A DNA stretch of 64,000 nucleotides, from contig CAJFCJ010000021.1 in NCBI GenBank assembly GCA_904063045.1, forward strand, positions 124,001 through 188,000. Direction: 5' to 3'. The position numbers and the translations under genes are program-made. This DNA is from Dimorphilus gyrociliatus (lineage: Eukaryota; Animalia; Annelida). Shown piece after piece: positions 4,401 to 59,273 of the stretch (position 1 is the first letter of the stretch; every line of letters starts with the position of its first letter). The notes under the pieces are model-generated. The model did not search any database, had not been told where the DNA came from, and was given only the letters and a program-made list of their open reading frames with translations.

Positions 4401-7343
4401 ATTTTATCGGCAAAAAAAATAAGCGGTTCTTGATTGCCGATATTTTTCTCTTCGGTTTTTTTGCCCTATATCAGGGGCGTCTACGTTGTTTTTTTTAATA
4501 CAGGAAATGACGGGCGTCGTTAGACGTCGCCTAGAACCGCCTCTTCGTCACGATCCTCTTCACTTTATAAGATTCCATATTAGACGCTATATATTAATTT
4601 TTTGGAGACATTCAATCCATGTGTGAGATGTCTTTGTAAATATCTACGTTACGTATCTATTTTAAGTCTGTGAATTAAGACTAAATACATACCCGGATGA
4701 GTCAGCTATTTAATGTACCGTAAATGTATTTTAGCATGATTCGTACTTTTACGATAAGAGTAATCTTTCATATAATTTGTATTTTCTTTTCTTGAATACA
4801 AACCTAATTCTTCAGTCTCTTTAATCTTTAACTATAGCTTTCAAGTTTTCCTCTCCTCAAACTACCATACAACGTTCAATAGAGAGTATCGTGTGTTAAA
4901 AATAATCCTCTTCATGCTGCTTAACGTCTATTATATTAGATGCTGGTGCAGGGGCGTCTATTGTGTTTTAACTGCCCATACAACTTTTAATTACTCTTTT
5001 TTTTTTTGAAAAAAAAAAACTGCGCTTGATATCCGCATCCATTACACGTTGTGAAGAGGAGGCTCAAACTGATAACTATTCAATTTCAAGTATACCACCT
5101 ACTTCTTTTTATGTAGTATAGGTTTATTTAACAAAAGATAACTTGTGAATTTTTCCCATAGTCTTTTTCTATTTGATAACTCTTTAGATGAAAGGGTTTC
5201 CCATCTATTAGAAATCTCAATTCAGAGTATTATTCAATTCTTTCTTTTTTTTTATTGGTTATTAGATTCTTTTTTAAACGAAAATTTGTTGAGAAGACAG
5301 AGAAAGAGAAGGAGAGGGAGGAGGGGGAGAAAGGAGGATAAAAAAAAAAACAATTTTTTTGGATTTATTATTCAAAAAAAAAGAGAAATAATGAACAATA
5401 ATAACAAAAAATGGTTTTAAATTAGTTTTTAATAAGGTGTGATGAGAGGAAAATAATCGAGTGTAACTTTTATGAAAAAATTTGAATGTGGAATGTCACG
5501 TGATGAAAATAAAAGTCGACAGTGGAACGACATTTGCGTGACGGCATCTTATTTAAGCGGCGTTTTTTATTTTATTTAGAAAACGATGCGCCTTACTGAA
5601 AGCCAATTATCAATGTCGGCAAGCTTTCTTCTAACATGGACGATTATTCAATTTAATCACTTGGGGTCAGACGAGGTGAAATTTGTGATCATAGCTGGCG
5701 TCACCAAAGAGGCGAGACGTCAGTTCGTTAAAATATTTTCCTTTAACGCCGTTGTAAATTTCGTATAATGATGTCCATTTATGAGGGTTGATGGAGTCAC
5801 ATCTGTTCAAGCCCGCAGTTGGCAATATGCCCTGTACATGTCATTTGCATGTATGCTGTTTTAAAGTTTCCAAACGTGTATTACTAATTACAGAGAGATA
5901 AAGTCTTGTTATCTACTGTTGACAAATCTAGCTCCCCGGAAATCTAATTATCAAGTTTATCTGTTTCAAAATATTGACTTTTCACAAGCAGGTAGTTTTA
6001 AAGGGATAATTCTTGCGTGACAAGTATAAATGAAATAAAGATGAATTAACGGGAGAGAGGGAGAGAAATAGAGAAGAGAGAAGAGAAAGGAATACATCAA
6101 AATTATCGAAACGTAAAGTTTTAATTAATAATTACGATAATTAAAGTTAAAATGAAACATAAATTTTTTTATTTACCCTATCACGTAACGATGGGAAATT
6201 GTACAAACATGATAATTAGTATGAAAATGACTGTGCAATGTTTTATACGACCCGTAAAAAATGACGCTAATTATTTATCCATTAAGAAATCCAATGTTGT
6301 CTCTACGGAAGAGCTATCATTAAAGATATTATGACGCAATAAAATTCTACCCTGTTTCCCCCCCTTTATGCTTCATCATCTGAGCACAAGTGTGTTCAGA
6401 TGTCTCAAGTGTCAGTATTGTTCAAACTTATGCATTATTAATAAACAGTTTTTCTTCAGCCCCGTTTACGCCATTTAGACCGGTCAATGTTCTGAGAAGC
6501 ATTTAATGTCTACATAAATGTATAATATATGGTTTATAATATGTAAATGAATTGAATAAAGAATTTAAATTCACCCTACAAGAAATACTTTACTTGCGTA
6601 TTTATAATTCAAAAGTGGTGTGAAGACAGATAATATTGTTCAAGAGTTATAAATATATATATATATAGTATATAACAGAAGAAAAAAGTCTTTTCTCTGG
6701 AGCTCTTCAAACCTATATAACAATGAAATGGGTTGCTGCATTCCTGTATTGCTGTAATCCACCCCCCACTCCTCTCTCTCCCCCATACAAATTAACTCGT
6801 TAACCTCTTGTTCTTTTTTACAAACAATAGAAAAGAGTCATACTCTTTGCAGGTCGATAGGTATCACTTGAACGTACCTAAGGGAAAAATGAGGGCAAAT
6901 ATACACTATTAATAAAGTAATAAAGAAGAAAAAAGACATTTAATTTCTTTTTTAGCTTTTATAAACAATAATAAATAAAAGGAAATTGAATTTAAAACAT
7001 ATAATAAAATATTATTTCACATATACAGTATTATAGCGAATTAAGCTATATGGCTCGTTTAATTATCTTATGTATCGTATTTCTATGGGTGTACTCATAA
7101 AATACATGTAAAATAATATATAGGATCATACACCTATGAGGGAGGGTGGGAGTGAATAAAACGAAAATTTTACCCTTTTATCTATTGCTTTTTGTTATTG
7201 TTCAAAATATGATGCGTTATCAATGTACTATAAATAACTTTATTTTAAACTGCAATAGATATTTACCACATATGTTCATATTTACTAATATATATAGGTG
7301 ATATGTATTCACCTTTGTCTATTAGTCTATATGCCTATCTATC

Positions 7344-9342: not shown

Positions 9343-11937
9343 GAAGGAAGAAGAAGAACGAAATCAATAATAATGAATTATCCAATGTTCAAAGATCTAA
9401 AACAAAATGAAAATGTAAATGAAAAAAAAAACCATCTAAAATTTTAAAAACTTTCCCTTTTTTAGTTGAAAAAATTTCAATAATTTACGTAATTAAATCA
9501 CAGAAAAAGAAATATGTATTGAAAGAAATGATCAGTTAAGAATCTTATCAATAATCCAAATATGAATATATCTATCCATCTATATAATGTATGCACTATA
9601 TATTGTATAATAAACATTACATACATAGATACATATTGAATACATACATATATACATAAATATATATATATATATATATATATTCTCTATAATATATCCA
9701 TTTTTCAGTCCAGCGTCATCGACTGTGAAATATGAAGATAAAAAAATTCCTCGGCCCAATAGATATATTTATAGTTTAAAAGGACAATAACCATTATTAT
9801 AAGCGTGAAAACTTGCTGTCTCTTTTCAATCGGCGTGCAGAGTTATACCCCATGGCAAAAAAAATGCTTTCAATATTTTCTTTTTCTATGTGGTATATAT
9901 ATACTATATATTATATTCCATATACGTCGTAGTATATTCTTTGCGAACTTCTGCTGGTGACGACTAAGTATATTATGTCAATATAAGGGTAAGGTAACGA
10001 GCATGGGTTTTATTATATATGGTTGCACCTTTGTACTCCAGGTTTTAATTGAGCTTAAAGTTAATTTCACTGGTATTGAGATGTGGAGTGGCACATTTGT
10101 AAAAGACAATGGGAGTCTTGTCGAGTAAAAAAGGGAACCGGAGAATGTTTTTGGTAGTATCGATTTAACGAACTACCAAACTGAGAAATTAGCTAAAAAC
10201 CTCGGAGCTGACACGTTCAAGTTCTCACGTCGGAGTCACGCAAAGTTGAAGTATCTTGCTGAGGAAGAGCGTTCCCTGTGCTCAAATAACCACTCAACCT
10301 TTACGCGTCATCTCTCTCTCTCTTCCTTTTTTTATTGGAGCAGCTACGAAATAATTACGACCGAACACACATACATAGCCGGCAGCCACCTTAACTCCGC
10401 CCGTCAACACCCCACTTCTTATTTTCAGCATTGCTCTTAACCATTTTTTTAACGATACACTTTAAACGTTTTTCTGAATAATATAGACAACAACCTCATT
10501 AAGTATCATTAACCGACTCATCACCGAACAGGGTCGCGTGTCCCGGCTAAAGGTTAACAAAGGTCAACCGCGTCCGCGTCATTAGCGCTACGAATGTTTT
10601 CGAACGTCGCCCCTGGTCGTACACATGCCGAATGACTGCTTGAATTACAATAATCGCTGGCTTCGATGATCTTTGACAGTTTTTCCAAGACGTCTAATTA
10701 CTAACGCGTGTTCACAGACGCTAACATATCGACTTTCCTTTATGATAAGCATAAAAAAGGATTGGTAGTTTGAAATGATTTGCATACAGGCAAGAAAAGT
10801 GAAAATAAAAAAAAAACACTTCTCCGAACTCACTTCGCGGACACCCGATTAGGCGGAGAGACATTCTGGTTCGCGCGCGTTAAAAGCACCATACTCCCCA
10901 CTATTCTACAAAGGATTTAATTGATTTTTTATACGCTCGCCACTTGTCAACGCTCTAATTTAGCGCTTTTTTTCAATTCACACCGCCCCGCAGAGTGTAG
11001 GCCTAAATACCGAAACCACCTTATATAAAGACCTTAGAATATATTTACTAACGCTTATTTAAATTCCTAATAGAAAAAATGTTGTTTATTTTTCTTTGGG
11101 CAGATACCTCTGTTACTTGTTTTCTTTTTCTATCCAACAATATATTCCCTTTATATTCTTTAATACTCTCTATTTGCTATGGCGGAAATGGAAAGCGTTA
11201 ATTATAAGGAGCGGCTAAAACACAGACTACAGTTAATTCTATAAACTAGCTTTTAAGCAATCTTTTAGCTCTTACTTTCCACTAAAGAAACCATAAAAAT
11301 CTTTTTTTTATATTGAAAACACATCCTAATGTCGTCCATTTAGGAGAGATAGAAAGAAAAATAATAGAAAAATTGAGAAATCATGAGAGAGAGAAAGAGA
11401 GAGACAGAGAGAGAGACAGACAGACAGATAGACAGAAAGAGAAACAGTCATGCATAGGGAAATAGTAAAACACTTTCCATTCCATAAATGACTTTCGAGT
11501 AGTAGACCACCCGAAAATTCGGAAATTGGAGATAAAAATGAGCTAAATGCTCACGATTCACTCTTATACATTAATATATCGCAAAGCCTAGGCCTATGGG
11601 ATACGTCAACAACAACAAAACAGATGGTAAGATGATTTTAGCGAATAAATATTATTTTATTTACTTAAACTCTATACAAACTGACGTTAAGTCGCAAAGT
11701 TGCCGCAATGTGTATACAAGATAATTATAGAGTAACGAATAATACAGAAAATGATTTTGCCGTGTCAACGAGCAAGGTCAGTTGTAAAAATAAAATAGAA
11801 AACGGTTCTATGGGAAAACTAGGTTATATACAGGGAATATCTCCGCAATTTATAAATCGCACAAATATTACTAACCGAATAAGACCGGATCCGACAATTG
11901 ACAAGCAAATTTGTAATCTATTTATTGTTTTTTATTT

Positions 11938-12865
11938 GGCGCCATCTGTCGTTCTTACCCCCGTTTTTAATAATGGAAGAGGGAAGAAAAAAGAGGGATA
12001 AAAAAAACCAACAAATCAGGAAGAGAAGAGTATAGAAACGTCATCTATATGATGTTATTGGTTTTAATTTTTTTTTTAAAAAAAAAAATCCTAAAGAAAG
12101 AAATTAAGAGCTTTCTAACAAGGAAGATGATAAAAAATTACATCTGTTTTTTTTACTTGTTTTCTTCATAAAAATAGCAACTGTTATGAAAGGAAAAAAA
12201 AAAACAAAATAAACAACAACAACAGGTAAGATAGATAAAACATATAAAACTTGTTTATGAAAATTCCTATACAATAGTGTGTTTTTTTTACCTTTCTTTA
12301 CGTCAACAAGGAATGACTATACAGGTTTATAAATATATAAAATACAAACTAAACATAACTGACATTTCTTCGTTAAAATTTAATATTCATATATACATAT
12401 ACTGTATATACTGAATATATATATATATATATATCGTATATACTGTATATGCAATTGTATAACAGCACAACAATATCATTTCTAAGTCTGTGCAGTGTTT
12501 GCAATAATTGGAACATGTTCATACTGACAGATGACGTATAGTCACTGATAAAATGATAATACTAATCTTTATATTATTTTACATGTTTTTTTTATAGTTT
12601 GGCTTTTTTTTAAAAGAAAATAGATAAGAAAAATAATATTTTCACAGGACTGATGTCTTCAAACAGTTCCGACTTATAATAGACGAAACAAAGGAGAATA
12701 AAATAGTATCATAGGCTATAAATCAAGATTCAACTTCTTATTTCAACTTGAAGATGAAATTGAAGAATGTTTATTCCTTACTTTGAATTTATAGTTGCGT
12801 TGTTTTATTTTAGTTTGCTCCATCTATTATTGTTTTTATTATTAAAATGATACGCCATCTATTAG
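11938..12865 (-). promoter_or_regulatory. Two CTCF-like motifs (reverse orientation) 3' of the FNDC-like gene
   Basis: GGCGCCATCTGTCG at 11938 and CGCCATCTATTAG at 12853 match the reverse complement of the CTCF core CCASYAGRKGGCRS. Confidence 0.5.
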
Positions 12866-12986
12866 ATATTTCGTTTAATAAATAGATTAATAGTCTTTCA
12901 TTGGCATATTTTACTTTTTTGTTTGAATCGTTCAAGAGTTTAATTTTAATGATAATAATCATTGTTAGGTTTTTTTTGTAGAACTA

Positions 12987-13645
12987 TTAAACGGCCTCTC
13001 CAGTTTCATTGTCGCTATCGATTCTTATAAGTTCCACAAAAATATCACTTGCTTCTGATAAGGAATTGCATACGCTATTGCTCTTCCTTAAATTTGGACA
13101 GGACGAAAAGGAAGTTGTTTTTTGTTTACCCTCATCTTCAAAATGAACGCTTGACCTAGAAGAGGATGTAGATCTTTTCGATTTCCTCTTCTTTCTTTTT
13201 TCTTCTCCAGTCAGCTGTGCTGGGCGATCGGAATGTATTGATAATTCCACAAGGGTTGTCAAGGCACCTTTAATGGGCAGAATTGGTGCCGTTTTCATCC
13301 TCTCAAATTTTTTCATCTCCTTCTCCCCACCCTCCAATTGAAGAGAAATATTTGGCATTGTATGCATCCTTTCAAACTGTTTTCTTTGTCTAGCTTGCAT
13401 AGTCCTAGATAAACTTCTTGGTAATGTCCTACAGATGACGCTGTCTTTTGGTTTCTTAACAACCTTGATCTTTTCGAGATTTTTTGGATTGTGTCTATAT
13501 CTTGGTTCGCTTGGTTGGAGGACTCGAATTTTCTGCCATTGATGAATAAATATGACAACGGCAAATATCCAAGCGCATAATACAACGAATATAATAAAGA
13601 TTTCTTCTCCACTATATTGGTAATTCGTTCGGTTGAACGGTGTAG
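12987..13645 (-). CDS. FNDC4/FNDC5-like protein, coding exon 2 (TM helix + cytoplasmic tail)
   Basis: Acceptor ttttattcacag|CT at 13646/13645 is phase-compatible with exon 1 (L-P-A-T-P). The TM segment GEEIFIIFVVLCAWIFAVVIFIHQWQKI resembles FNDC5 GEVLIIVVVLFMWAGVIALFCRQYDII. Joined CDS is 984 nt (327 aa). Confidence 0.85.
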
Positions 13646-16600
13646 CTGTGAATAAAACAGGCAAAATTAACTTACATCCTTTTTTGTCTTTATTTTTTAT
13701 ATTAAATATAGATTTATCAACGTTTACATGTACAGTATATACAATTAAGCATATATATATATAGATATAAAGTAAATTCAGTGATTATGACCAGTTGCAA
13801 ACAGAATAGGATTAATTTCCTTGAATATCGTATTGATTGGAGAAAATAGTAAAAAAACCCAACATACATCAATTAGGGCACTCATGAATAAAAAGTAGGC
13901 CTAATACTACATATTTAACTTTCACAGCGTTTCTAGGTGATTTAGCTCGATTGTAAACAAACGTAAGCCTAGAATTCATTGATATAAACCCAGTCTAAAA
14001 TAACAAAAGTCTTAAGTACAATTGGGTTCATTAAATACTTTCAAATAATAACCTCTAAAAAATATAGATAATTAATACAATTATGTACATTTTTACTCGA
14101 AATGTGTTATCAGATGATAGAGAAAACATAAAGGTATATTATACATAAATGATGGATACTAGAATTCGTTTCGTTGAAGAAAGTAAATATAAAAAAGTAG
14201 GGGATTTAACAATTGTATGGATAAAGTCTGTTAACTGACAACCATTAGAGACGGTTAATACTTTTAAGATTAGATTTTATTTGGCCACTAGAGATTTAAA
14301 TTTCTGGTTTGTTTAGCACAAGCATTTTCGCGGCCGTTTCCCTATCAAAGAGGCACTTGGCTGATGGGATTCAATTGAATTGATTTTGTGCATTGATTTG
14401 GAACAGAGTTCATGCTTTCTTCACTCTGAATCGGTCGATTGGAAAATATTGTGTACGTGCCATATATATATAAGTAAGAGATACATAAGAAAAAACTTTA
14501 CTACAAGTAAATCGAGCGTAAAAAAGCCAATTTTTCTAGATAAATCTTTCCATATATACCATATCATTAATATAAAAAACACTGGTCCATGCTAATAATA
14601 GCATATCAATGTAATACATAGAAGTTATAAAACCTAGCAATAGACTATAAAAGTCCCCAACAATGTAAATTAAAATTGTTAATTATTAATTATTTCAAAG
14701 TGCAAACCACATTCCTATTTTCATTTCTAAATTATTTATCCTTTATAGAAAGCATTTGATCTCAACATTGTTACAGGCCATGGTAAAACTATACTGTTAA
14801 TGGTGTAGATAACAGAGATAAAAGAGAGTTTTTAAAGACACTATTCCTAGAATACAACTGATAAACGAATAACAGAAATGGGGTATTACTGTATATATAT
14901 TTTTCTCTTTATCCTTTATATCTCTCTAAGGAGAATATGCTACTATTTTCTTCACCTTTCCACTCCAATGACATCCTCTACACTGTTTCTATCTTTCTAT
15001 TATTTACTTTTATCTAAAGTTATATAAAATTTAATTAAGCTAATTATTCTTTTTACCTTAAATTAAAGAAACAGGTTTTACCTTTAAATATCTATCTATT
15101 TTAGTCATAGAACAGGTTTCTATCCTATAGAAAACAAGAGAGACATACTGTAAATTTTATTGGACTTAGATTACAAGATAAACACTTATATTATGAAATA
15201 ATAAAGGATAAATGGGAACAAATTTCAATTGTTAGCTCAGTTGATAATTTTCAAAATTCTTATGATATTTATTAACTTTACATTTGAAGTGTTAATAATG
15301 AAAAAGTATTAAAGGGGCGTTGTTTAATAGTTTTAATATAAAAAGAGGAGAAAAAACAAAAAAAATACCTGAACGTAAAAACTTGAAAGTCAGCATAAAA
15401 TAGTTCTTTTAGAATGATTACATGCATATTGAAAAAAATCGATGTTACATCCTTGTAAGCTAATTTAAAATATTGCAAGATATGCATAAATAAACGTATT
15501 ATATTGCATAATGTTTTATGTGCTTTTGCTATATAATATAGTAATTAGTATGTAATTTGTCTGTAGGTAAATAGTTCCTATTTAATGGACTTTTTTCTTT
15601 TTTTTTTTACTATACGAAGAAATTGTTCTATCAGCGTAAAAGAATAAGATTCAGTTAAAAAGGAGGAGAGAAACTGTAACACACCATCTTCTACAGTGAA
15701 TTATTGCGTTGATGGTTTTTATAACATAAATTGAGCTTACTAACAACCGCTTATTCCCGCTAAATATTTTCGGCTTAATAGTTTTTTACGCCTCATTCAT
15801 TCCAACCGTAAAAATAATAGAACATTATACCTTACTAGCTGATTTTATTTATTACGGTTATATATATAAATTAATTCATATTCGACAATAAACGCCCTAT
15901 AAATAATAGGCTAAATCTTTTTAATCAAACTTCTGTACTGTATTAACGATAAAAGTTTATCTTTCTACCGCAGAGGAAAAAAAAGCACACGAAAAGCCCT
16001 CCCTTGGCCAGCTCTCTTCCCCTATTCCAAACACCTACAATTTCTAAAATAATGAGAGAAGGTCAAGGCTATTTCACCTGTATTCCATTCAATGTTCAAT
16101 AAACGTGATGGTATTTAATTAATTATAAGGGAAGTGTTATTGAAAGAACGAGAACAAGGGAATATGATTAAAATCGTCATTTTCTATACATTCAATATGT
16201 CTAATTAGTGATAACATTAATCTACCTAATCAAGTTAGCTGTATGTTGTTTTAAGATATGGGTATGAACAATTTTATATTATCGATTCCGTGTACATCGT
16301 TAAATCCCTTATTATCTCGATAATCGCTAAGTACGAGAGAAAAATTAGGAGAAGATATGCGTAGTATTAAGAAAGAAATGTTTTTTTTTCCTCCCGTTAT
16401 TTTATATTAGAGAGAGAAAGTGTTAGGCCTAATGATGCTAACCGGCAGAAAATTGTTGGAAAAAGCTTACAAAATTATATTTTTTACGTTATAAAGCCTG
16501 TCTACTCTGGTAAACCTAGAATCTTCGCGTGTTTCTTGTCGATTTATGACTAAAATATATAATATTTTTATAAGATTACCGTCCAAGTCGGTTATATACT

Positions 16601-50208: not shown

Positions 50209-51285
50209 TGTTTATTTTATGTTAAATTAATCAATACTGCATAAATGATGTTTCTAAACTTTTCCTTTTTACTCCTCTGCAATAAGGTTTCCATGGTGTC
50301 TTGTAGCAAATTTGACAGTAAGAAAATTGATCCTGAATCTAACAGAATTTCTCACTTAATCGCTCTTATCTATTCCTATTCTTTTCTCTCTTTTCCACTA
50401 CTATCCTTCTCTTTTCTCTTTCTTTTTCAGTGCATGTTACATTTTAATAGGATAATTTCGTATTTCAAATATATATTGTATACAGTGAGAGTTATATAAA
50501 TATCTATATCTATATATACAACTAAATATGGTATCTATGTTTGTATATATATATAGTATATGTATATGTAATAGTAAAGAATGATTGAAGGGATTATCAT
50601 TTGATACTTACAATCGGTTATATTATATATAATAAATTGCGTAAATATCGACAAAACTCGGCAATCTGTTGATAACAGATGGAAATGAACGCCCTGGATA
50701 AAGCACAATCTGGTGCCAAGGTGAAATTACAGTAATATCAGTCGTTCATTAATGAGACATATTTTTTTTTATTATTAAAAACAATATAGTTTTCAACTAG
50801 TTTTTGAATTTCTATGATCGACGACCTTGTTTAAAAAAAAACTGATTTCTTTTGTTTCACCGACAAATAGAACTGTAATAAAAAAAAAAGAATAGACAAA
50901 AAGAGAAACGAAGAAGGGAATTTTTTTAATAAACATAAAAAAAGGAGCTAAAACTTGAAAGGGAGAGAAATGAAGGAAAGGAAGGTTTTAGCAAATAAAT
51001 TGGACGGGCTATAAACGGACTGTAAACTCATGAAGCGTTGAGAGTACGAGTCATAATCTCCTTTGAAAACAATACGTCAAGATCGAAAAACGTCTTATAT
51101 AATTTTTCAGGCCAGCGAACAAGGCATTCGATAGGCCTATAATAGTTCCCCAACAGATGGCATCCGTCGAGCTGGCCCGTACAATCGAGACCGCGCCGCC
51201 AAAGTGCAAAAAAAAGAGAAGGAGAACAAGCCGGTGTTTAGCTTTTAGTAATGTTTCCTGAGTTTGTAGTGGATATGTAAAAGAA

Positions 51286-51700
51286 ATGTATGGAATGGAA
51301 GAAGAATATCCCTCACCTACTTCTAATCGAAGAAACTCGGCCTTTTCCACCTGGCAAGGAGAACAGAGAAGAAATTCTAAAAAGAAAAGACCTGAAGAAG
51401 AACGGATAACTACACCAGTTCGAAAAGCAAGGAAGGAAAGTTCTGTATTCCTAAAAAGGGACGGTAGTGAAGAAAGTATAAAATCGGATTATGACCAAAA
51501 AACGTCTCTAAAAACTAAAAAATCGACACCGGTGGTTTCAAATACAGCAAAATTATCGGTCAGACAGTGGAACATTCTCTTTGCGTTTTGGGATCACGAT
51601 ACGTTCGTCAGGGCTCGTTACGGTGGAGTTTTTTTATCCTTCATGGCAGCTATTTGCGCAATTATTAGTCTGGTAAATGCAGATTGGATAAGATACTCAG
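51286..51700 (+). CDS. TMEM47/PERP/VAB-9-like claudin-superfamily tetraspan, variable exon 1a (long N-tail + TM1)
   Basis: ORF ends in TM ARYGGVFLSFMAAICAIISLVNADW. Donor TCAG|GTACGT at 51700/51701, phase 1. The true start may lie upstream. Confidence 0.85.
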
Positions 51701-53807
51701 GTACGTTACTTGAACTTTAAAGTATTTTGCAAAGAAATATTAAGACTATAAAATAGGAAAAATAAAACAAAAGTGCGAGAATGAAAGTGAAAAAATTAAA
51801 AAAAAAAGAACATAAAACACTCGTAAACAACTTCTTTTGCAAAATTACAGCTTTGAGTAGGCACTTATCCTTTCCACTCCCCCTCCTTCCCCTCTATCTT
51901 TCCTCCTTTTCTTTCTCTTTCATTAATTAATTATAAACCTATTGTATAAAACGCCTCAAATTTTTGGGTATTTCATTCAGAATGATTTTTATCAATAAAA
52001 AACGTATGTAACATTTAACTTTGGTATTATTAATTATTTAAAATTGTAAGATCAATGAATATTGTTTTTTTTTGTCCCTTTTGACTAGAAAAAGTAGGTA
52101 TACATACGGTGGGCTTATGTTTTAACATTTATGCAGTGCTTTTGCATATTTTGTTGTATCAAATGGATGCATTTAAGTAGAGAGCATATGCGCTTTGTTT
52201 TATTATATGTCAGAGATCAATATATAGTATACTGTATATATTACAGTATATTATTTATAATGTACAGTAATTTATAATGTACCATATTTTTAAGTAAATA
52301 ATTTGAAGCATTCAAGTCTTAATAAATACAAGCTGTGTAGTAGCAGGTATATAGCTATGTAAGGGATATGCTATTCCTTTATCCGTATAGTATAAATAGC
52401 TATCCTAATCATATTCTATATATTTTTACATTCCTTCCTTACGTAATATCCAATTTAATATATGACAAGAGCTTATACGGTAATTTAACCCCAAAGCCTA
52501 TATGGCAGGTTGAAAAAAGCGGCTCATTGTATATCTCAATGCCAATACCAACAAATATGAAACTTTTCTGCTCCGTTTCTAAATTTTATCTTATACTTTT
52601 TAAGTACATGAATATAAAAAGAAGAAAATATTATATTATCTATCTACTATATGCTAATAAGGAAGCTAAATATAAATATATTTAAATATTCATTACTTTG
52701 TTTCTTTTCAAGTGTTTTCTCTATATTTTTTATATTGTTTCTTAACAAAAACTTTTTAAATAATAAATTTTATTTTACTATATAGATATGTATTATTGTT
52801 ATTTTTTGGCACATAGGCAGGTGTTGTTTTCTCTTTCTTTAAATACGTAAATATAAATATATTGTATATATTCAGCCTCTATTCCATACTAATATAACAT
52901 AATATACTAACTACATATGTTTTCTATATACGTGTGTGTATGAACTTTTATTTATGTATTTAATTTTCATCCTATATCTGTGAATATAATATTTAAACAA
53001 TACTATTAAAGTTATTAATTTATTACATTATACTTATTTTTATAACTGCTAAAGCTGTTTTTCTGATGTTAATAATGGATATTATTTAATATTTCAAGAA
53101 AATATGCTTTAAAAGAGCGACAACGAATTTTATCGGTCATACATTTTCCATTAGATATTATTATAGAATATATACGACAACGAATATATAAATTAATTTC
53201 CAATTGAGGAGGTTTCGTCCTACAACTAATGACCGTTTATCTTTTAGATGATATTCAAAGAATTCTAGAGTGCAGCTTACCAAAAGAGTTTCACTTTCAA
53301 AAAAATATAACATATGCTTAGTTATTGATGAATAACAACCTGTTGCTGTAAAAAAAGGAAGAGAAATTTTTACTATCTAACCCAATACTAATTATGCGAG
53401 GCTTCATCAGTTCTGTTTCTCGGCTATGAATATTTGATCCCTTATTTAAATATTTAATATTAACTATGCAAGAACTTGTTACTAAAGAGTGAGCGATTAA
53501 TCCATTAATGATTATTCCTTCAACTATCAGTAAACTTTATATACAATAGAATGGGCAAAATATATGGGGAATTCACAGTTTATTACTTGGCTTTTATTCC
53601 ATTTTCCCAAGAGAATAATTAGATGGTCGTCTCTTTATTAATAGTTTATTAGTATCATTCCGTTTCACTTTGTTTCCATTTAGAGGCTTGTTGCTCGCTT
53701 TAGACCCCTCTCGCAAATGCAGTATACACAGTTGACTCGATAGATGACAGCACTGATTATTGTTTATTTAGCCCTTCGATATCTTTATATAAGTGTTCAC
53801 TTTTCAG

Positions 53808-53900
53808 ACACCAATTACGGAGATGTTACTGCTGGACTATGGAAAATATGCTCATCTACCGTTGAAAGAGACAACTGTACGAATTCGCTCGGTAAAAAAG
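53808..53900 (+). CDS. Tetraspan variable exon 2a (extracellular loop 1, GLW-C-C)
   Basis: Acceptor cacttttcag|AC and donor AAAG|GTAAGA, phase 1/1. Encodes DTNYGDVTAGLWKICSSTVERDNCTNSLGKK, which carries the claudin-superfamily W-GLW-C-C signature. Confidence 0.88.
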
Positions 53901-53966
53901 GTAAGAACTGAACGTAAAGTAAGTCGATACGTGTTCAACGTCTCTCCAGTTATCGAAAATCGTACT

Positions 53967-54011
53967 GTCACGTGACTAACTGACTGAGAAGAAATCTCAG
54001 AGTCACATGAT
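53967..54011 (+). promoter_or_regulatory. Candidate internal promoter for tetraspan isoform b (tandem E-boxes)
   Basis: Palindromic GTCACGTGAC (53967) and GTCACATGAT (54002), USF/MiT-TFE-type E-boxes, followed by a CT-rich tract. They lie about 360-400 nt upstream of the exon 1b ATG. Confidence 0.45.
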
Positions 54012-54363
54012 CAACTTTTTCCCCCACCCTCTCTCTATCTCTCGCTCTCCCTCTCATTTTATATGTCTATCTCTATCTCGCCCTCATTCTTCTATCTATT
54101 TACTCCTACATCTCTCCGACATTGTTTGGTCTACGTCTCTATTTCTCATTGACTAACGCTTCTTCTCGCTCTCCCACCCATCCTGTCGACATATCTGTCT
54201 TCTTTAAAAAAAAGTCTCTGAGGTGTCTCCGTCCTCTTCCCACGACAATTGTTTGAAAAAAAAAACAACAAAAGGGAAATGAGCCTAATGGAAAAGAGAT
54301 GCTTATGAAATTTTCATAAACTAACTCATTGAACGCAGCTGAGGTCATGTTTAGAAACTATTC

Positions 54364-54589
54364 ATGCAAACGATTCGCGTCTATTTGCGAACGATGTTGC
54401 AATTCGTCAAGTTCAAACCGTCTACTACGGAGAACATTTACAGCCTGAGGAAATTTTCGGAGGCAGAACAAAGAGAAGAGAAATATCTAAGGAAGCCGTA
54501 TCGGTTAGGAGGAGTATTCAGTGGTTTTTTCGCAATTTGTTTGACCCTTATATCGGTTTCAAATACCTATTGGGCTCAGTTAGAAGCCG
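54364..54589 (+). CDS. Tetraspan variable exon 1b (short N-tail + alternative TM1)
   Basis: ORF ends in TM YRLGGVFSGFFAICLTLISVSNTYW, paralogous to exon 1a. Donor GCC G|GTAAGG at 54589/54590, phase 1. Confidence 0.82.
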
Positions 54590-55469
54590 GTAAGGCATAA
54601 AATAACCTTTTTTATTGAATTATCGTCGGTTAAAGGGTCGGTATAGCCAAATACTTTTGTTATTACAAATTAGATCGCGGGTTTATATGAAATTTTTATA
54701 ATGCGTTTCTCATTAATTTAAGAAGATTAATGTATTCAATAGCATTTTTATTAATTGCTGTAAAGGTAGAATAAAATGTTAAAAGAGATATTTTATATAG
54801 AGAGAATGGAAGCTGTTAACCAAAGAAAGAGACAAAACGATGATAATTTTCGACGCCCCTTATCTATTTAAATTTTTAAATTCATAATTACTAAGAACAA
54901 AGTGACGCTTTAAGACGTTTTTTATTTTAAATGTTAAGACAGTTACTTTATTCTACTTCCATTTGAAAACAATTTGTCATCTGTTGAAACAATCCGGAAG
55001 ATTTAAGTAAGATTACTATACATATCTGTGGCATTTATTACTCTATAATAATTAGAAAATAGATAGACAGACCTTTGTTCTGAATTTATATGCAATAAGT
55101 CATCTTTTGTTACGTTTATTCTTTTACTTTCTATTATACATTTCAATAAGGCACAATATAAAATATTTAAGGCATCTACTAACATGGCCGACTTTTCTGT
55201 AAGCTAATTCGCCATTCAGAGACGACAAACACTTTTATTTGATTGACAAATTCTATAATGAGAATATTAAGTGATGACGATAAAAGAGAAAGCTCGTCAA
55301 ATAATAAGATAAAACTAAAATAAAATATCTCTTATGAAACCGTCCCTTTATCGACCAGTGCATACACTCATTAGCCTGGTTTATAGGACTATAGACACAG
55401 CTAATTATATCACTTCTTCAAGATTCACAGTTCGTAAACCTTTCCCGCATTTTTCTCTATTTAATACAG

Positions 55470-55553
55470 GAGTCAACGTGGGTCTATGGGAGGATTGCTT
55501 CGAAAATGCCACGATATTGCAGTTATCGAAGATTTGCCCGCATTCTAAAACTT
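55470..55553 (+). CDS. Tetraspan variable exon 2b (alternative extracellular loop 1, GLW-C-C)
   Basis: Acceptor tttaatacag|GA. Encodes GVNVGLWEDCFENATILQLSKICPHSKT. The only phase-1 donor found is the weak ACTT|GTAGGG, so the 3' boundary is less certain. Confidence 0.75.
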
Positions 55554-57031
55554 GTAGGGACAATATTTTCGTATATGTTTATAAGATTTACAGGGAATTT
55601 TTATTTCATTCAAACGTTAAGATCGTTAAATAACTTGAAAGTACTTTTATAAATTAAATTCTATAAAAGACCCTATCTTATTATAAGGCATAACTTTTCT
55701 ATCAATCATAGAAGGAAGAAAGGCAATTATTAATAGACAGCAACTCACAGTCTTCTATCCCTTACGAATCAAAAATTATTAATACTCTATGTATTTAAAA
55801 GTTTGATAGATATATTTTCAATGCAACAGTCTAAATCTTATTCCAGTTTTCTCCAAATCTATTCAATGTAGTTAGTATAAAGAAGATACGAAAGAAACGC
55901 TTTCCATAAAAAATATGACTTTGGTCTGATTTATTATCAAAACACGAAATATAAAGGGAAACATAAACATTTCTCTTCTCTTATATAATCCAGTTTATCT
56001 AAAAGGAGTTGTAAATACATCTTAGTTATAACTAATGAGCGTTGTACAATCAGGAAATATTACTAAAAAATTAGACCCTTCCACAAAGAGATTAAGCTGG
56101 TAAACAGAAGCCATTTTTCATAAATGACTAGGTAAATATAGAATAAATTTGTTTAAATAGAAACGCTACATTCTTGATTTGGTCTAAAGCGTTTTCCTTT
56201 TTCTAATTTAATGCAAACCTTATCGTTTAGGCTTCTTTTTAAATGAAATACTGATTCGTATATAAATTAAATTTTTTACTTGTCAATGACGCATTGAAAT
56301 TTCCGGTAACAATTTTTAGTGTTAAATAGTATATTAATGATAAACTATAGAGGATATTTTTATAGCAGATAGTAGAGACTTGATTGAATTCTATTTTTAA
56401 CGATGAAGAAACCTTGTAATCTGAGTTTGGGGAGAAAATGATAAATATTACATATATATCATCCTATTTTCATAGTCGTTAGGAGTAAATAAGGAAAATT
56501 AGTTAAAATAACCTATATACAGCTTTAATAGATGTAATAAGTTAGGGTTAAGGATTGCAGAAAGAGTAAGGGAATAGAGAATGAGGGAAGCGGGGGGGTG
56601 GGGAAAGAGAGTGCGAAGAATGATAGCCGAGGCAAAAGAAACAGTAAGAGACGGAGAAAAGGGGGATAGAAAGGGGAGCACAATTCTATTCGTATAAACG
56701 TCGAATGCAAATGGGACAAATTGCGTTTGTAATCTTATAGAATATAAGGTACAGTAGTTTTTTTTCGAGTACTGGAGAGGCTGACTAGTTTTTTTCTTTT
56801 TCTTTATTCCATTTTTTGCCTATTCGTTGAGTAAAAATTTGATCAACGTAACTTGGTGGATTGGGACAAAAGAGAAAGGGAGCAGGGACGACGGGAGGGG
56901 AGAAAAGAATATAGGAAAAGGAAGGGGAGGAGATAATTTTCCCTTTCTATTGCCTTGTCTATATCCCTTTTCTTCGAAATGTCGCTCTGCTTGGCGAAAC
57001 ACTTTTATTTTTTTGCTTTTTCCGATTACAG

Positions 57032-57181
57032 ATTGGCAGAAAGGCGTTATCGGCCTGCTTATTTTCTCTGTTGCCTTCGGATTTTTGGCTACTATATTGG
57101 CGCTTTGTGGCGTTTGCAGTTTACATTTATCCAAAAAGATATACTACTTTCATTCAGCTGGTGAAATATTTTTTGTCTGTG
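57032..57181 (+). CDS. Tetraspan shared exon 3 (TM2-TM3)
   Basis: Acceptor tttccgattacag|AT and donor TGTG|GTAAGT, phase 1/1. Encodes WQKGVIGLLIFSVAFGFLATILALCGVCSLHLSKKIYYFHSAGEIFFVC, aligning by eye with TMEM47 (DWQ..L.LL). Confidence 0.9.
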
Positions 57182-58567
57182 GTAAGTATAAAGGCCTATT
57201 CAACTTTTAATCGACTGGAAAAGAATCCTTATAAGTTCATTAGGTGTGATATGTACATACTCTCTTCTCCTTTTCCTTTCTTTCTTGTTCTATCATTCTC
57301 TTATTCTCTCATTCTTTTATGTCTTATTTGTCTTTCTCTCAATGTTCCCTTTCTTTCAAATCCACCGCTGTTTAGCCTTAAAGTTTCGTTCATAAGAGAG
57401 AATTCATTTTCTGCCACAGAGAAGAAATAAAAGTTTAATTATGTCGGAGGCGCGGTTCGTTAATCTGTAAATTTATTTTTAAACCTTTGAAATTGTTTTA
57501 GTATAATCTAGGTGTATAATATTATTTTGCAAGGACTTGACAGTTCTTCTACATCATACTATATAAGTAGATATTTTCTAAGTGCTGAATTATAGAAACA
57601 CGGCAACAACAAAAAAAAACACACAGTATACTGTATGCTCATATATATATACATATATATATATACTCATACATGCGTTCACAGTTATGTAGTTGAGTGC
57701 ATTTCTATATTTTCCGTACACATACAGCAAATTAATTTTCAGTCAAGCTTAATACATATTTGCATCCAAATCTTTAGTCACCTCTTCAAAAGGTACGTGT
57801 TTCAAAATGGAAAAGACAATGAGAAAAAGAGAGAAAAATCGATAAATAACTAATCGTTTCTTTTAACAGTCATTTCCTATTATTACGCTTGATTAGGCTT
57901 TTGGTTTATTATCTGACAAACTTTTCTGAAATTTTTTTTTATTACGATAAAAGAGAGTTTGGAAACAAAAATTCTTCGAAAAATAATACACTATTTATAC
58001 AATATATAAATGACCTAGGCCTATACATTAAATAATAAATATTCATAATAATTTTCGTGTTTCTTTGAATAATCAACAAACTAAATCTTGTTGTTTTTTT
58101 AAAAAAAAAGAAGTAACTTATAATTTGCTTATAGTAAATAAAAATACTGTTGTTAAAAAAAAGGATAAAAGTGTAAAAAAATATATAAAAAACAAAGAAA
58201 GAAAGAAAGAGGATATTACTATAAATCATATTATATTACTCATAAGATTTTATACAGTTCAAATTCATCAATCATAAAATCTCTTCATCTTACTATATTT
58301 AGCAAAAAACATTTTTCTATCTTTTTTTTAAAGGGTTTTTTTTTACATTTCTTAACAAGAAAATGTATGTTCTAATGAATATACATAATCATGTTAAGGT
58401 ATAAAATTAAAAGAAGAAATCATCACAGAAAACAGGATTTTAATACATGGTTAAACGTTTAATACATCTTTCGTTTGAGAGTAATAATACTTATGAATAT
58501 AACCTCAAAGGGTTTCTATATATAGAGAAGTCTATTTTTGATAGATAGTTGTCAAACCGTGTATTGA

Positions 58568-59273
58568 GGCGCCATCTCTATACTATAGTTTAGTCAATTT
58601 TAAAATACTATCAAATTATTAATATATTCTTTGTTGTTTTTTTTTCTACAGCTTTAGCAACGATAGTAGCAGTAATTGTCTATCCAGTAGCTATTAATAT
58701 GCAAAAGAAGCTGTTGATAAAGACGTATGGCTTCGGTTATGGTTTAGGATGGGGTGGAGCTTGTTTCTTCCTAGGTTCAGCCTTCTGTATGTGCTTCGAC
58801 AATTTTGTTAGGACAACGAGTAATCTAACGTGTTGCAAACCGCCTATGAATAATCAGCGTTCAGTAGTTTAATTGATAATTAAATGCTTTAAGAGATAAT
58901 AAAGAAAAAGGAAAAGGAATATTACTCTGAAGAATTTGCTCACTATGCTCTAGTCTTGCTAAACTTGTATATACATCATTTAATCTTAAGAAGTAAAAGA
59001 ACGAATATTATGATTTCCTAGTAAAAAATTAGGTCATTAATTATTTCATCTCATAATATATATGTTTAAAAAAAGCGACTAAAAAGGACAGAACAATTAA
59101 GGAAACGAAAGTGATCTTTTTACAATCTGCTTCAATTTTATCACCTCTACTATTATTTCCATCTCTTTAATTCCGATGTCTTGTTTTCTATTCCTTTAAT
59201 TATATCATATATTAAACAAGAAGAGAAAGACTACGTGTTGCATAAAAAAATGTTTAACAGCGCCATCTGTGAA
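58568..59273 (-). promoter_or_regulatory. Two reverse CTCF-like motifs flanking the last tetraspan exon
   Basis: GGCGCCATCTCTAT at 58568 and GCGCCATCTGTGAA at 59260. Confidence 0.5.
58652..58872 (+). CDS. Tetraspan shared exon 4 (TM3 end, ECL2, TM4, C-tail ending in SVV)
   Basis: Acceptor tttttctacag|CT, phase 1. Encodes ALATIVAVIVYPV..YGFGYGLGWGGACFFLGSAFCMCFD..QRSVV*, where YP and GYGLxWG are hallmarks of TMEM47/PERP. Not in the ORF track. Confidence 0.9.

What the first reader, a model, noticed from the sequence alone, without database searches (positions are those of the whole stretch)
51286..58872. Variable/constant claudin-superfamily gene: two TM1+ECL1 cassettes share one C-terminal half
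Seen in sequence: the order is [1a TM1 - 2a GLW-C-C loop] - [1b TM1 - 2b GLW-C-C loop] - exon 3 (TM2-3) - exon 4 (TM4, SVV). No TM2-4 exons lie between 2a and 1b. All junctions are phase 1 and both routes give open frames (879 nt/292 aa and 681 nt/226 aa). Identical intron positions imply tandem duplication of a two-exon cassette. The loops have diverged strongly (DTNYGDVTAGLWKICSSTVERDNC vs GVNVGLWEDCFENATILQLSKIC). Established: ECL1 sets adhesion and paracellular selectivity in claudins, and vertebrate CLDN10a/b and CLDN18.1/18.2 swap the TM1+ECL1 region using alternative first exons. Inference: this invertebrate TMEM47/VAB-9-like gene evolved the same loop-swapping design independently, giving tissue-specific junctional isoforms. 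Automated annotation would probably merge or split it wrongly.
Basis: partly seen in the sequence, partly recalled or inferred. Interest (0 to 1): 0.85.

Follow-up and report, generated by a model that had tools for sequence, protein, structure and literature searches.

The report
Claudin-like gene with two alternative fronts
This worm gene for a four-pass, claudin-like membrane protein has two alternative front ends (first membrane span plus first outer loop) ahead of one shared back half; scallop, oyster and lamp-shell genomes have the same layout, but in this worm's RNA only the first front end was seen joined to the back half.

Summary
All six exons, GT/AG sites, phase-1 junctions and both open frames (292 and 226 aa) are as described.

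RNA contigs confirm route a (1a>2a>3>4) at depth about 198. They also show that cassette b is transcribed and internally spliced (1b>2b, depth 71). The predicted 2b>3 junction was not seen. Instead one contig runs unspliced from exon 2b into exon 3.

Both front modules have orthologues in other phyla, long 'a-type' and short 'b-type' proteins. I found the same exon order, [1a-2a]-[1b-2b]-3-4, in a scallop, an oyster and a brachiopod. Oyster transcript contigs encode complete b-type proteins. A tree of the TM1+loop module separates a from b on one branch.

So the two-cassette layout is real and predates the annelid-mollusc-brachiopod split; it is not a recent invention of this lineage. It parallels CLDN10a/b and CLDN18.1/18.2. 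I found no paper describing it.

The family is PMP22/claudin, closest to TMEM47/VAB-9 by leads only. Tissue-specific use, function and productive b splicing in this species remain untested.

The scan's notes hold no earlier finding of this on other DNA.

The parts
51286..51700 (+). Exon 1a. It holds start codon a, a 110-aa cytoplasmic N-terminal tail with conserved basic motifs, and TM1a. It ends in phase 1.
   Evidence: ORF and donor. X2 contig covers 51270-51700 at depth 209 and extends at least 62 nt further upstream. Joint 51700>53808 at depth 198. The module aligns only to a-type proteins, E down to 4e-21.
53808..53900 (+). Exon 2a, the first extracellular loop of isoform a (GLW...C...C). 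Phase 1 at both ends.
   Evidence: Joints 51700>53808 and 53900>57032 lie on one X2 contig at depth 198, both GT..AG.
53901..54363 (+). Putative internal promoter and 5' leader of transcript b. It lies inside the 2a-3 intron, is CT-rich, and has six upstream ATGs downstream of 54021.
   Evidence: X2 contig 54023-54590 at depth 78.7 begins about 54021. Bin arithmetic leaves about zero depth for 53901-54022. uATGs, and an in-frame stop at 54352 with no phase-compatible acceptor, come. A contig end is not a mapped 5' end.
54364..54589 (+). Exon 1b. It holds start codon b, a short conserved N-terminal tail and TM1b, and ends in phase 1. Orthologues begin at the position of the second Met (54394).
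   Evidence: Alignments of isoform b to b-type proteins start at residue 11. Joint 54589>55470 at depth 71.
55470..55553 (+). Exon 2b, the first extracellular loop of isoform b (GLW..C..N-A-T...C). Phase 1 at both ends. The donor CTT|GTAGGG is weak.
   Evidence: The acceptor is used in RNA. The loop aligns to b-type loops of molluscs and annelids. The predicted junction residue is Tyr before WQ, as in several b-type orthologues.
55554..57031 (+). The 2b-3 intron, present unspliced in RNA run X2. Reading through from 2b reaches a stop after 26 codons.
   Evidence: A single X2 contig covers 55469-57059 at depth 37.8. No joint or loose end is listed at 55553. The read-through translation and poly(A)-like signals at 55653, 56142 and 56266 come.
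57032..57181 (+). Shared exon 3: end of ECL1 (WQ motif), TM2, the short cytoplasmic turn and the start of TM3.
   Evidence: X2 contig 57030-57181 at depth 225. The loose end at 57181 reads the first 30 nt of exon 4. Weak PMP22_Claudin match on this piece alone.
58652..58872 (+). Shared exon 4: TM3, ECL2, TM4 and a Cys-rich tail ending in -SVV, then the stop codon.
   Evidence: The loose end at 57181 matches 58652 onward. 33 homologues at E<=1e-3, 13 at E<=1e-10.

Best explanation
This is one gene for a four-pass membrane protein of the PMP22/claudin superfamily, closest by leads to TMEM47/VAB-9. It makes two proteins that share TM2-TM4 and the C-terminal tail. They differ in the cytoplasmic N-terminal tail, TM1 and the first extracellular loop.

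Isoform a (292 aa) starts at a promoter upstream of 51286 and splices 1a>2a>3>4. This is shown by RNA.

Isoform b (226 aa, or 216 aa from the conserved second Met) must start at a second promoter inside the 2a-3 intron, near 54021. Exon 1b has no usable in-frame acceptor, and the species is reported to lack trans-splicing. It splices 1b>2b (shown) and then 2b>3>4 (inferred here; seen as mature mRNA in oysters).

Transcripts from promoter a skip exon 2b. The weak 2b donor may explain both that skipping and the slow removal of the 2b-3 intron; this is inference.

The two-cassette layout is ancestral to annelids, molluscs and brachiopods. By analogy with claudins, swapping the module would change both the outer-loop contacts and the cytoplasmic partners while keeping the rest of the protein.
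For: - Exon arithmetic and splice sites.
- RNA joints 51700>53808 and 53900>57032 (depth 198) and 54589>55470 (depth 71), plus a loose end at 57181 that reads exon 4.
- Exon 1b at depth 79, against 0-16 in the flanking intron.
- An in-frame stop 12 nt upstream of the 1b ATG and no phase-compatible acceptor.
- No trans-splicing reported in D. gyrociliatus (PMC7854359).
- Isoform a aligns to long a-type proteins and isoform b to short b-type proteins over nearly full length. Each variable module hits only its own type.
- The same exon order in Ylistrum balloti, Saccostrea cucullata and Lingula anatina.
- Oyster transcript contigs carry a contiguous b-type ORF that maps as 1b-2b-3-4. Mytilus transcript contigs carry an a-type ORF.
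- Near-identical shared halves in a-type and b-type proteins of related bivalves.
- The a|b split in the tree has support 95/90.
- Orthologues pass Pfam PF00822. The AF2 model of the Pinctada b-type protein matches claudin-19/-15 and MP20. The family profile hits MP20 and claudins.
Against: - No contig joins 55553 to 57032. One contig runs unspliced from 55469 to 57059.
- Exon 3 depth (225) is already accounted for by the a junction (198) plus unspliced RNA (38). That leaves little room for a b junction in that sample.
- The 2b donor is weak, and the putative b leader has six uATGs.
- Only one informative run was available. It consists of assembled contigs, which drop minor variants.
- No protein of this species was in the databases searched.
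- Capitella appears to lack cassette b, so the cassette can be lost in annelids.
Confidence: 0.7

Rival explanations
1. In this species cassette b is transcribed but not productive. Its RNA is spliced 1b>2b, then retains the next intron or ends within it. That would give at most a truncated one-span protein of about 129 aa, or a regulatory or decaying transcript. Only isoform a would be a working claudin-like protein here.
For: There is no 2b>3 joint, and a contig runs unspliced from 55469 to 57059. Depth falls from about 87 entering 2b to about 38 in that contig. Exon 3 depth is explained without a b junction. The donor CTT|GTAGGG is weak, there are six uATGs, and poly(A)-like signals lie in the intron. 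Capitella seems to have lost cassette b.
Against: Both b exons are open, keep phase 1 and keep all their splice sites. They retain the family motifs, two loop cysteines and an N-x-T site, and are 34-41% identical to b modules of other phyla. Roughly one random stretch in a thousand of this length would stay open in DNA this AT-rich (my estimate). Full-length b mRNAs exist in oysters. Contigs show presence, not absence. Long introns are reported to be retained more often in D. gyrociliatus (PMC7854359).
Confidence: 0.22
2. The cassettes are not mutually exclusive. Transcripts from promoter a include exon 2b after 2a (frame preserved, doubled loop), as the Lingula RefSeq model has it.
For: 2a and 2b are both symmetric phase 1-1 exons, so tandem inclusion keeps the frame. 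The Lingula model XP_013410926.1 contains both loops in series.
Against: X2 has no joint 53900>55470, and the 2a donor goes to 57032 at depth 198. Transcript-derived a-type proteins (P0019, P0046, P0047) carry only one loop. The Lingula model is computational.
Confidence: 0.05
3. These are two separate genes, and cassette a has its own TM2-4 half elsewhere.
For: None found.
Against: The joint 53900>57032 at depth 198 links 2a directly to exon 3, and exon 3 continues into exon 4. The same sharing occurs in three other genomes.
Confidence: 0.01

Closest known systems
Vertebrate CLDN10a/10b and CLDN18.1/18.2 (alternative first exons driven by alternative promoters)
   Same: Two promoters each drive an alternative 5' module that encodes TM1 and the first extracellular loop, joined to common downstream exons (PMC12172364; PMC9153115). 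The logic here is the same: the outer loop is swapped and the rest is kept.
   Different: This is a different subfamily (TMEM47/VAB-9-like, not a classical claudin). Each module is two exons, so the internal exon 2b must be skipped by a-transcripts without help from the reading frame. The modules also differ greatly in their cytoplasmic N-terminal tails (about 110 versus about 45 aa here, up to 375 aa in molluscs). The layout is shared by annelid, bivalves and brachiopod. Productive use of the second module has not yet been seen in this species.
TMEM47 (TM4SF10/BCMP1) / C. elegans VAB-9 / Drosophila CG6982 clade of the claudin superfamily
   Same: It is a four-pass PF00822 protein of about 180-230 aa. 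The scallop orthologue is named 'transmembrane protein 47-like' by RefSeq. The nearest language-model clusters to the b-type orthologue are VAB-9 and arthropod TMEM47, both at 0.94. VAB-9 acts at adherens junctions (PMC3879130).
   Different: No TMEM47 or VAB-9 sequence was retrieved by any search here, so orthology is untested. The long a-type N-terminal module has no detectable relative outside Spiralia. I found no paper describing alternative front modules for TMEM47 or VAB-9.
Solved claudin-fold proteins: claudin-15/-19, lens MP20, TARP gamma subunits
   Same: The AF2 model of the Pinctada b-type orthologue (pLDDT 83) matches them at TM 0.6-0.8. The family profile matches MP20 at 3e-9 and claudin-19 at 9e-8.
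   Different: Sequence identity is only 14-20%. The model is of an orthologue, not of the window's own protein.

Membership tests
PMP22/EMP/MP20/claudin superfamily (Pfam PF00822) | Match to the family profile above the curated cut-off | tested here: inconclusive
   The window's protein could only be scanned exon by exon. Exon 3 alone gives 15.6 bits against a cut-off of 26.7. Orthologues that align to it over their full length score 43-58 bits.
PMP22/EMP/MP20/claudin superfamily (Pfam PF00822) | Four membrane spans with a GLW...C...C motif in the first outer loop | tested here: met
   Both loops carry GLW and two cysteines. TM1, TM2 and TM3 were found by hydropathy. TM4 is glycine-rich, fell below my threshold, and was placed by alignment instead.
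PMP22/EMP/MP20/claudin superfamily (Pfam PF00822) | Claudin fold | tested here: met
   Tested on the orthologue P0035 only. The model has pLDDT 83, and its top matches are claudin-19, claudin-15 and MP20. The profile-to-PDB search agrees.
TMEM47 / VAB-9 clade | Groups with TMEM47/VAB-9 rather than with other claudin-superfamily clades in a phylogeny | not tested
   No TMEM47 or VAB-9 sequence was returned. The only support is a RefSeq name and Atlas similarity of 0.94, which are leads.
Alternative-first-exon claudin design (CLDN10/CLDN18 type) | Two alternative 5' modules, each encoding TM1 + ECL1, upstream of shared exons | tested here: met
   The same order is found in three other genomes.
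Alternative-first-exon claudin design (CLDN10/CLDN18 type) | Each module has its own transcription start | tested here: inconclusive
   Exon 1b is at depth 79 against 0-16 around it, and a contig starts near 54021. There is no in-frame acceptor for 1b. No 5'-end mapping is available.
Alternative-first-exon claudin design (CLDN10/CLDN18 type) | Both modules are spliced to the shared exons in mature mRNA | tested here: inconclusive
   Module a is joined. Module b is not seen joined in this species. It is joined in oyster transcript contigs.
Alternative-first-exon claudin design (CLDN10/CLDN18 type) | The isoforms differ in tissue distribution or function | not testable with these tools
   No tissue-resolved data were available.

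The most novel reading that the evidence does not exclude
Lophotrochozoans have kept a single TMEM47/VAB-9-like junction gene with two swappable [N-terminal tail + TM1 + outer loop] modules under separate promoters since before annelids, molluscs and brachiopods diverged. This would be an old, conserved counterpart of the CLDN10/CLDN18 isoform switch that arose separately in another branch of the claudin superfamily. The long a-type tail would be a spiralian innovation. Both isoforms are made in this worm, in different cells or stages.
Probability: 0.6. Interest if true: 0.6.

Novelty: new member of a known kind. Interest (0 to 1): 0.5.

Why it matters
If both isoforms are made, this is a second, independent and very old case of a claudin-superfamily gene that changes its adhesive outer loop by swapping a front module. 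It also changes the cytoplasmic tail. The two modules were kept side by side across several phyla, which argues that they do different jobs. That gives a direct handle, through isoform-specific probes or knock-outs, on how invertebrate epithelia diversify junction proteins.

On the practical side, the locus is mis-modelled in several public annotations: loops merged, modules fused or split, or the loop exon dropped. Orthology tables for this family are therefore unreliable.

Tried and rejected
- Pfam scan of single exons gave only a sub-threshold claudin hit on exon 3. The full spliced proteins have no reference, so I did not type them into any search tool.
- The JGI metagenome scan for the 2b|3 junction found nothing. 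The control scan for exon 3 itself also found nothing, so that collection does not hold this organism and the blank is uninformative.
- Three word-index protein searches and one exhaustive search with exon 4 returned no protein of this species and no arthropod, nematode or vertebrate TMEM47/VAB-9.
- The Atlas search with the a-type N-terminal module gave nothing above 0.84.
- A look-up of the Tubulanus protein found no locus. Its isoforms X1 and X2 differ only at the extreme N-terminus.
- I considered spliced-leader trans-splicing as the source of transcript b. I set it aside because it is reported absent in D. gyrociliatus and other annelids. This depends on the species name, which I did not verify.
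- I considered whether the weak 2b donor is a conserved device. The scallop 2b donor (ATG|GTGAAG) is not notably weak, so that idea is only a local inference.
Full report
**What is in the sequence.**
- 1a: 51286-51700
- 2a: 53808-53900
- 1b: 54364-54589
- 2b: 55470-55553
- exon 3: 57032-57181
- exon 4: 58652-58872

All introns are GT..AG and all junctions are phase 1. Route 1a-2a-3-4 gives 292 aa and route 1b-2b-3-4 gives 226 aa. Joining all six exons breaks the frame. Nothing resembling TM2-4 lies between 2a and 1b.

**RNA evidence (only one read-laying run was allowed, on 51270-57260).** Run X2 has an unrecorded library type. It behaves as RNA: exons lie at depth 80-225, introns at 0-38, and there are spliced joints. 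It holds three joints:
- 51700>53808 and 53900>57032, on one contig at depth 198
- 54589>55470, at depth 71

A loose end at 57181 reads the first 30 nt of exon 4. Isoform a is therefore confirmed end to end.

Cassette b is transcribed and internally spliced, at roughly a third of the level of a. A contig covering 54023-54590 at depth 79 begins about 120 nt downstream of the 2a donor. By bin arithmetic, 53901-54022 carries about zero depth.

The predicted joint 55553>57032 is absent. One contig runs unbroken from 55469 to 57059 at depth 37.8, and no loose end is listed at 55553. Exon 3 depth (225) roughly equals the a junction (198) plus the unspliced contig (38). My estimate is that a hidden b junction can be at most a small fraction of a in that sample.

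There are three caveats. These are assembled contigs, which drop minor paths. Depths are means over whole contigs. Only one sample was informative. Run X1, a coral metatranscriptome, holds this organism's RNA at depth 3-4. It shows the 1a>2a joint and unspliced stretches, but has no coverage of exon 3, so it is uninformative for the question.

**Family.**
- Exon 3 alone gives a sub-threshold PMP22_Claudin match.
- An exhaustive search with exon 4 found 33 relatives.
- The full-length relatives pass PF00822 at 43-58 bits.
- An AF2 model of the Pinctada b-type orthologue (pLDDT 83) matches claudin-19, claudin-15, MP20 and TARPs.
- The family profile hits MP20 (3e-9) and claudin-19 (9e-8) in the PDB.

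Superfamily membership is therefore solid. The TMEM47/VAB-9 label rests on a RefSeq name for the scallop orthologue and on language-model similarity of 0.94. I could not retrieve TMEM47 or VAB-9 sequences to test it.

**Both modules are old.**
- The relatives fall into long 'a-type' proteins and short 'b-type' proteins.
- Isoform a aligns from residue 15 to 282 with a-type proteins, and isoform b from residue 11 to about 216-224 with b-type proteins.
- The variable part of a hits only a-types (E down to 4e-21), and that of b only b-types (E down to 5e-15).
- The two window modules are 37% identical over 43 aa.
- A tree of the TM1+loop module separates a from b on one branch, with support 95/90 and in 93% of bootstrap trees. 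The window's modules fall on their respective sides. That alignment is short (71 columns) and has long branches.

**Same layout in other phyla.** tblastn on fetched loci finds the order 1a, 2a, 1b, 2b, 3, 4 in three other species:
- the scallop Ylistrum balloti (L001; phase-1 sites)
- the oyster Saccostrea cucullata (L009)
- the brachiopod Lingula anatina (L003)

A-type and b-type proteins of related bivalves have near-identical shared halves. Oyster transcript contigs (L004, L005) carry a contiguous b-type ORF that maps as 1b-2b-3-4 on L009. Mytilus transcript contigs carry a-type ORFs.

The residue just before the WQ motif is mostly Asp in a-types and His, Asn, Tyr or Asp in b-types; in oysters it is Gly versus Arg. 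That pattern is expected if the shared exon supplies the last two bases of a split codon (my reading). The duplication therefore predates the annelid-mollusc-brachiopod split.

Capitella has 1a, 2a, 3 and 4 but no detectable b. Paralvinella shows 1b, 3 and 4 within the stretch fetched.

**How it most likely works.** Exon 1b has an in-frame stop 12 nt upstream of its ATG and no phase-compatible acceptor. It can therefore only be a first coding exon. Trans-splicing is reported absent in that species (PMC7854359). Transcript b therefore needs its own promoter inside the 2a-3 intron.

That paper also reports a median intron of 66 bp, larger introns where regulatory elements sit, and more retention of long introns. 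This fits the 0.9-3.1 kb introns here and the retained 2b-3 intron.

Orthologues start at the position of the second Met (54394), so isoform b may be 216 aa. If transcription starts near 54021, the leader holds six uATGs.

Transcripts from promoter a must skip exon 2b even though including it would keep the frame. The weak local donor CTT|GTAGGG may explain both that skipping and slow 2b>3 splicing, but the scallop donor is not weak. The functional consequence is inferred from claudin biology, not tested: different outer-loop contacts and different cytoplasmic partners on a constant TM2-4 body with a -SVV tail.

**Comparison and novelty.** The logic is that of CLDN10a/b and CLDN18.1/18.2. This case differs in four ways: it is in another subfamily, the modules are two exons each, the N-terminal tail is swapped too, and the layout is conserved across phyla. 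Searches for TMEM47 with 'alternative first exon' or 'mollusc' returned no papers, and none of the papers returned for VAB-9, TMEM47 and claudin had a title or abstract on it; I read only the C. elegans review in part. Some RefSeq records carry isoform labels, so the raw information exists in databases.

I rate it a new member of a known kind and of moderate interest. The main open point is whether isoform b is productively spliced in this species.

Noticed in passing
L003 (Lingula anatina) 57107-57205 and 79316-79420: The RefSeq model XP_013410926.1 (P0021) strings the 2a loop and the 2b loop in series and skips 1b. This is either an annotation artefact or a sign that tandem inclusion of both loop exons occurs.
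   Followed up: partly
P0022 (Dreissena polymorpha LOC127881489): The model joins the a-type N-terminal tail (up to the FWEH motif) directly to a complete b module that begins with its own Met. It looks like a chimeric model of the two routes.
   Followed up: no
L002 (Capitella teleta) 4878-6781 and 12588-13813: Exon 1a is annotated as a separate 261-aa gene. Exons 2a and 3 are only about 50 nt apart, and no b cassette was detected, which suggests cassette b was lost in this annelid.
   Followed up: partly
L010 (Paralvinella palmiformis) 10538-10735, 15768-15917: The annotated protein P0098 goes from TM1b straight to the shared WQ exon with no first-loop exon. The short 2b exon was probably missed.
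   Followed up: no
window 54000-54200: This is a CT-rich low-complexity stretch. X2 shows a variant there (54015-54048 replaced by 24 other letters, depth 4) and a contig break. It may be a polymorphic repeat at the putative b promoter.
   Followed up: no
window 51286-51600 and a-type proteins P0043, P0045, P0019, P0029: The a-type cytoplasmic tail has conserved motifs: W.KWS.ERRAS.RRRL, TPVKKARKE..F and W..L..FW.H.F.R.R. They match no Pfam family and no relative outside Spiralia in my searches.
   Followed up: partly
window 51701-58651: The introns of this gene are 880-3131 nt. The median reported for Dimorphilus gyrociliatus is 66 bp, and that paper links unusually large introns to intronic regulatory elements.
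   Followed up: partly
window 51671-54177 (run X1): A coral metatranscriptome holds RNA contigs almost identical to this locus (2 gaps in one contig, 1 differing letter in the other). The worm, or a very close relative, was therefore present in that coral sample.
   Followed up: no
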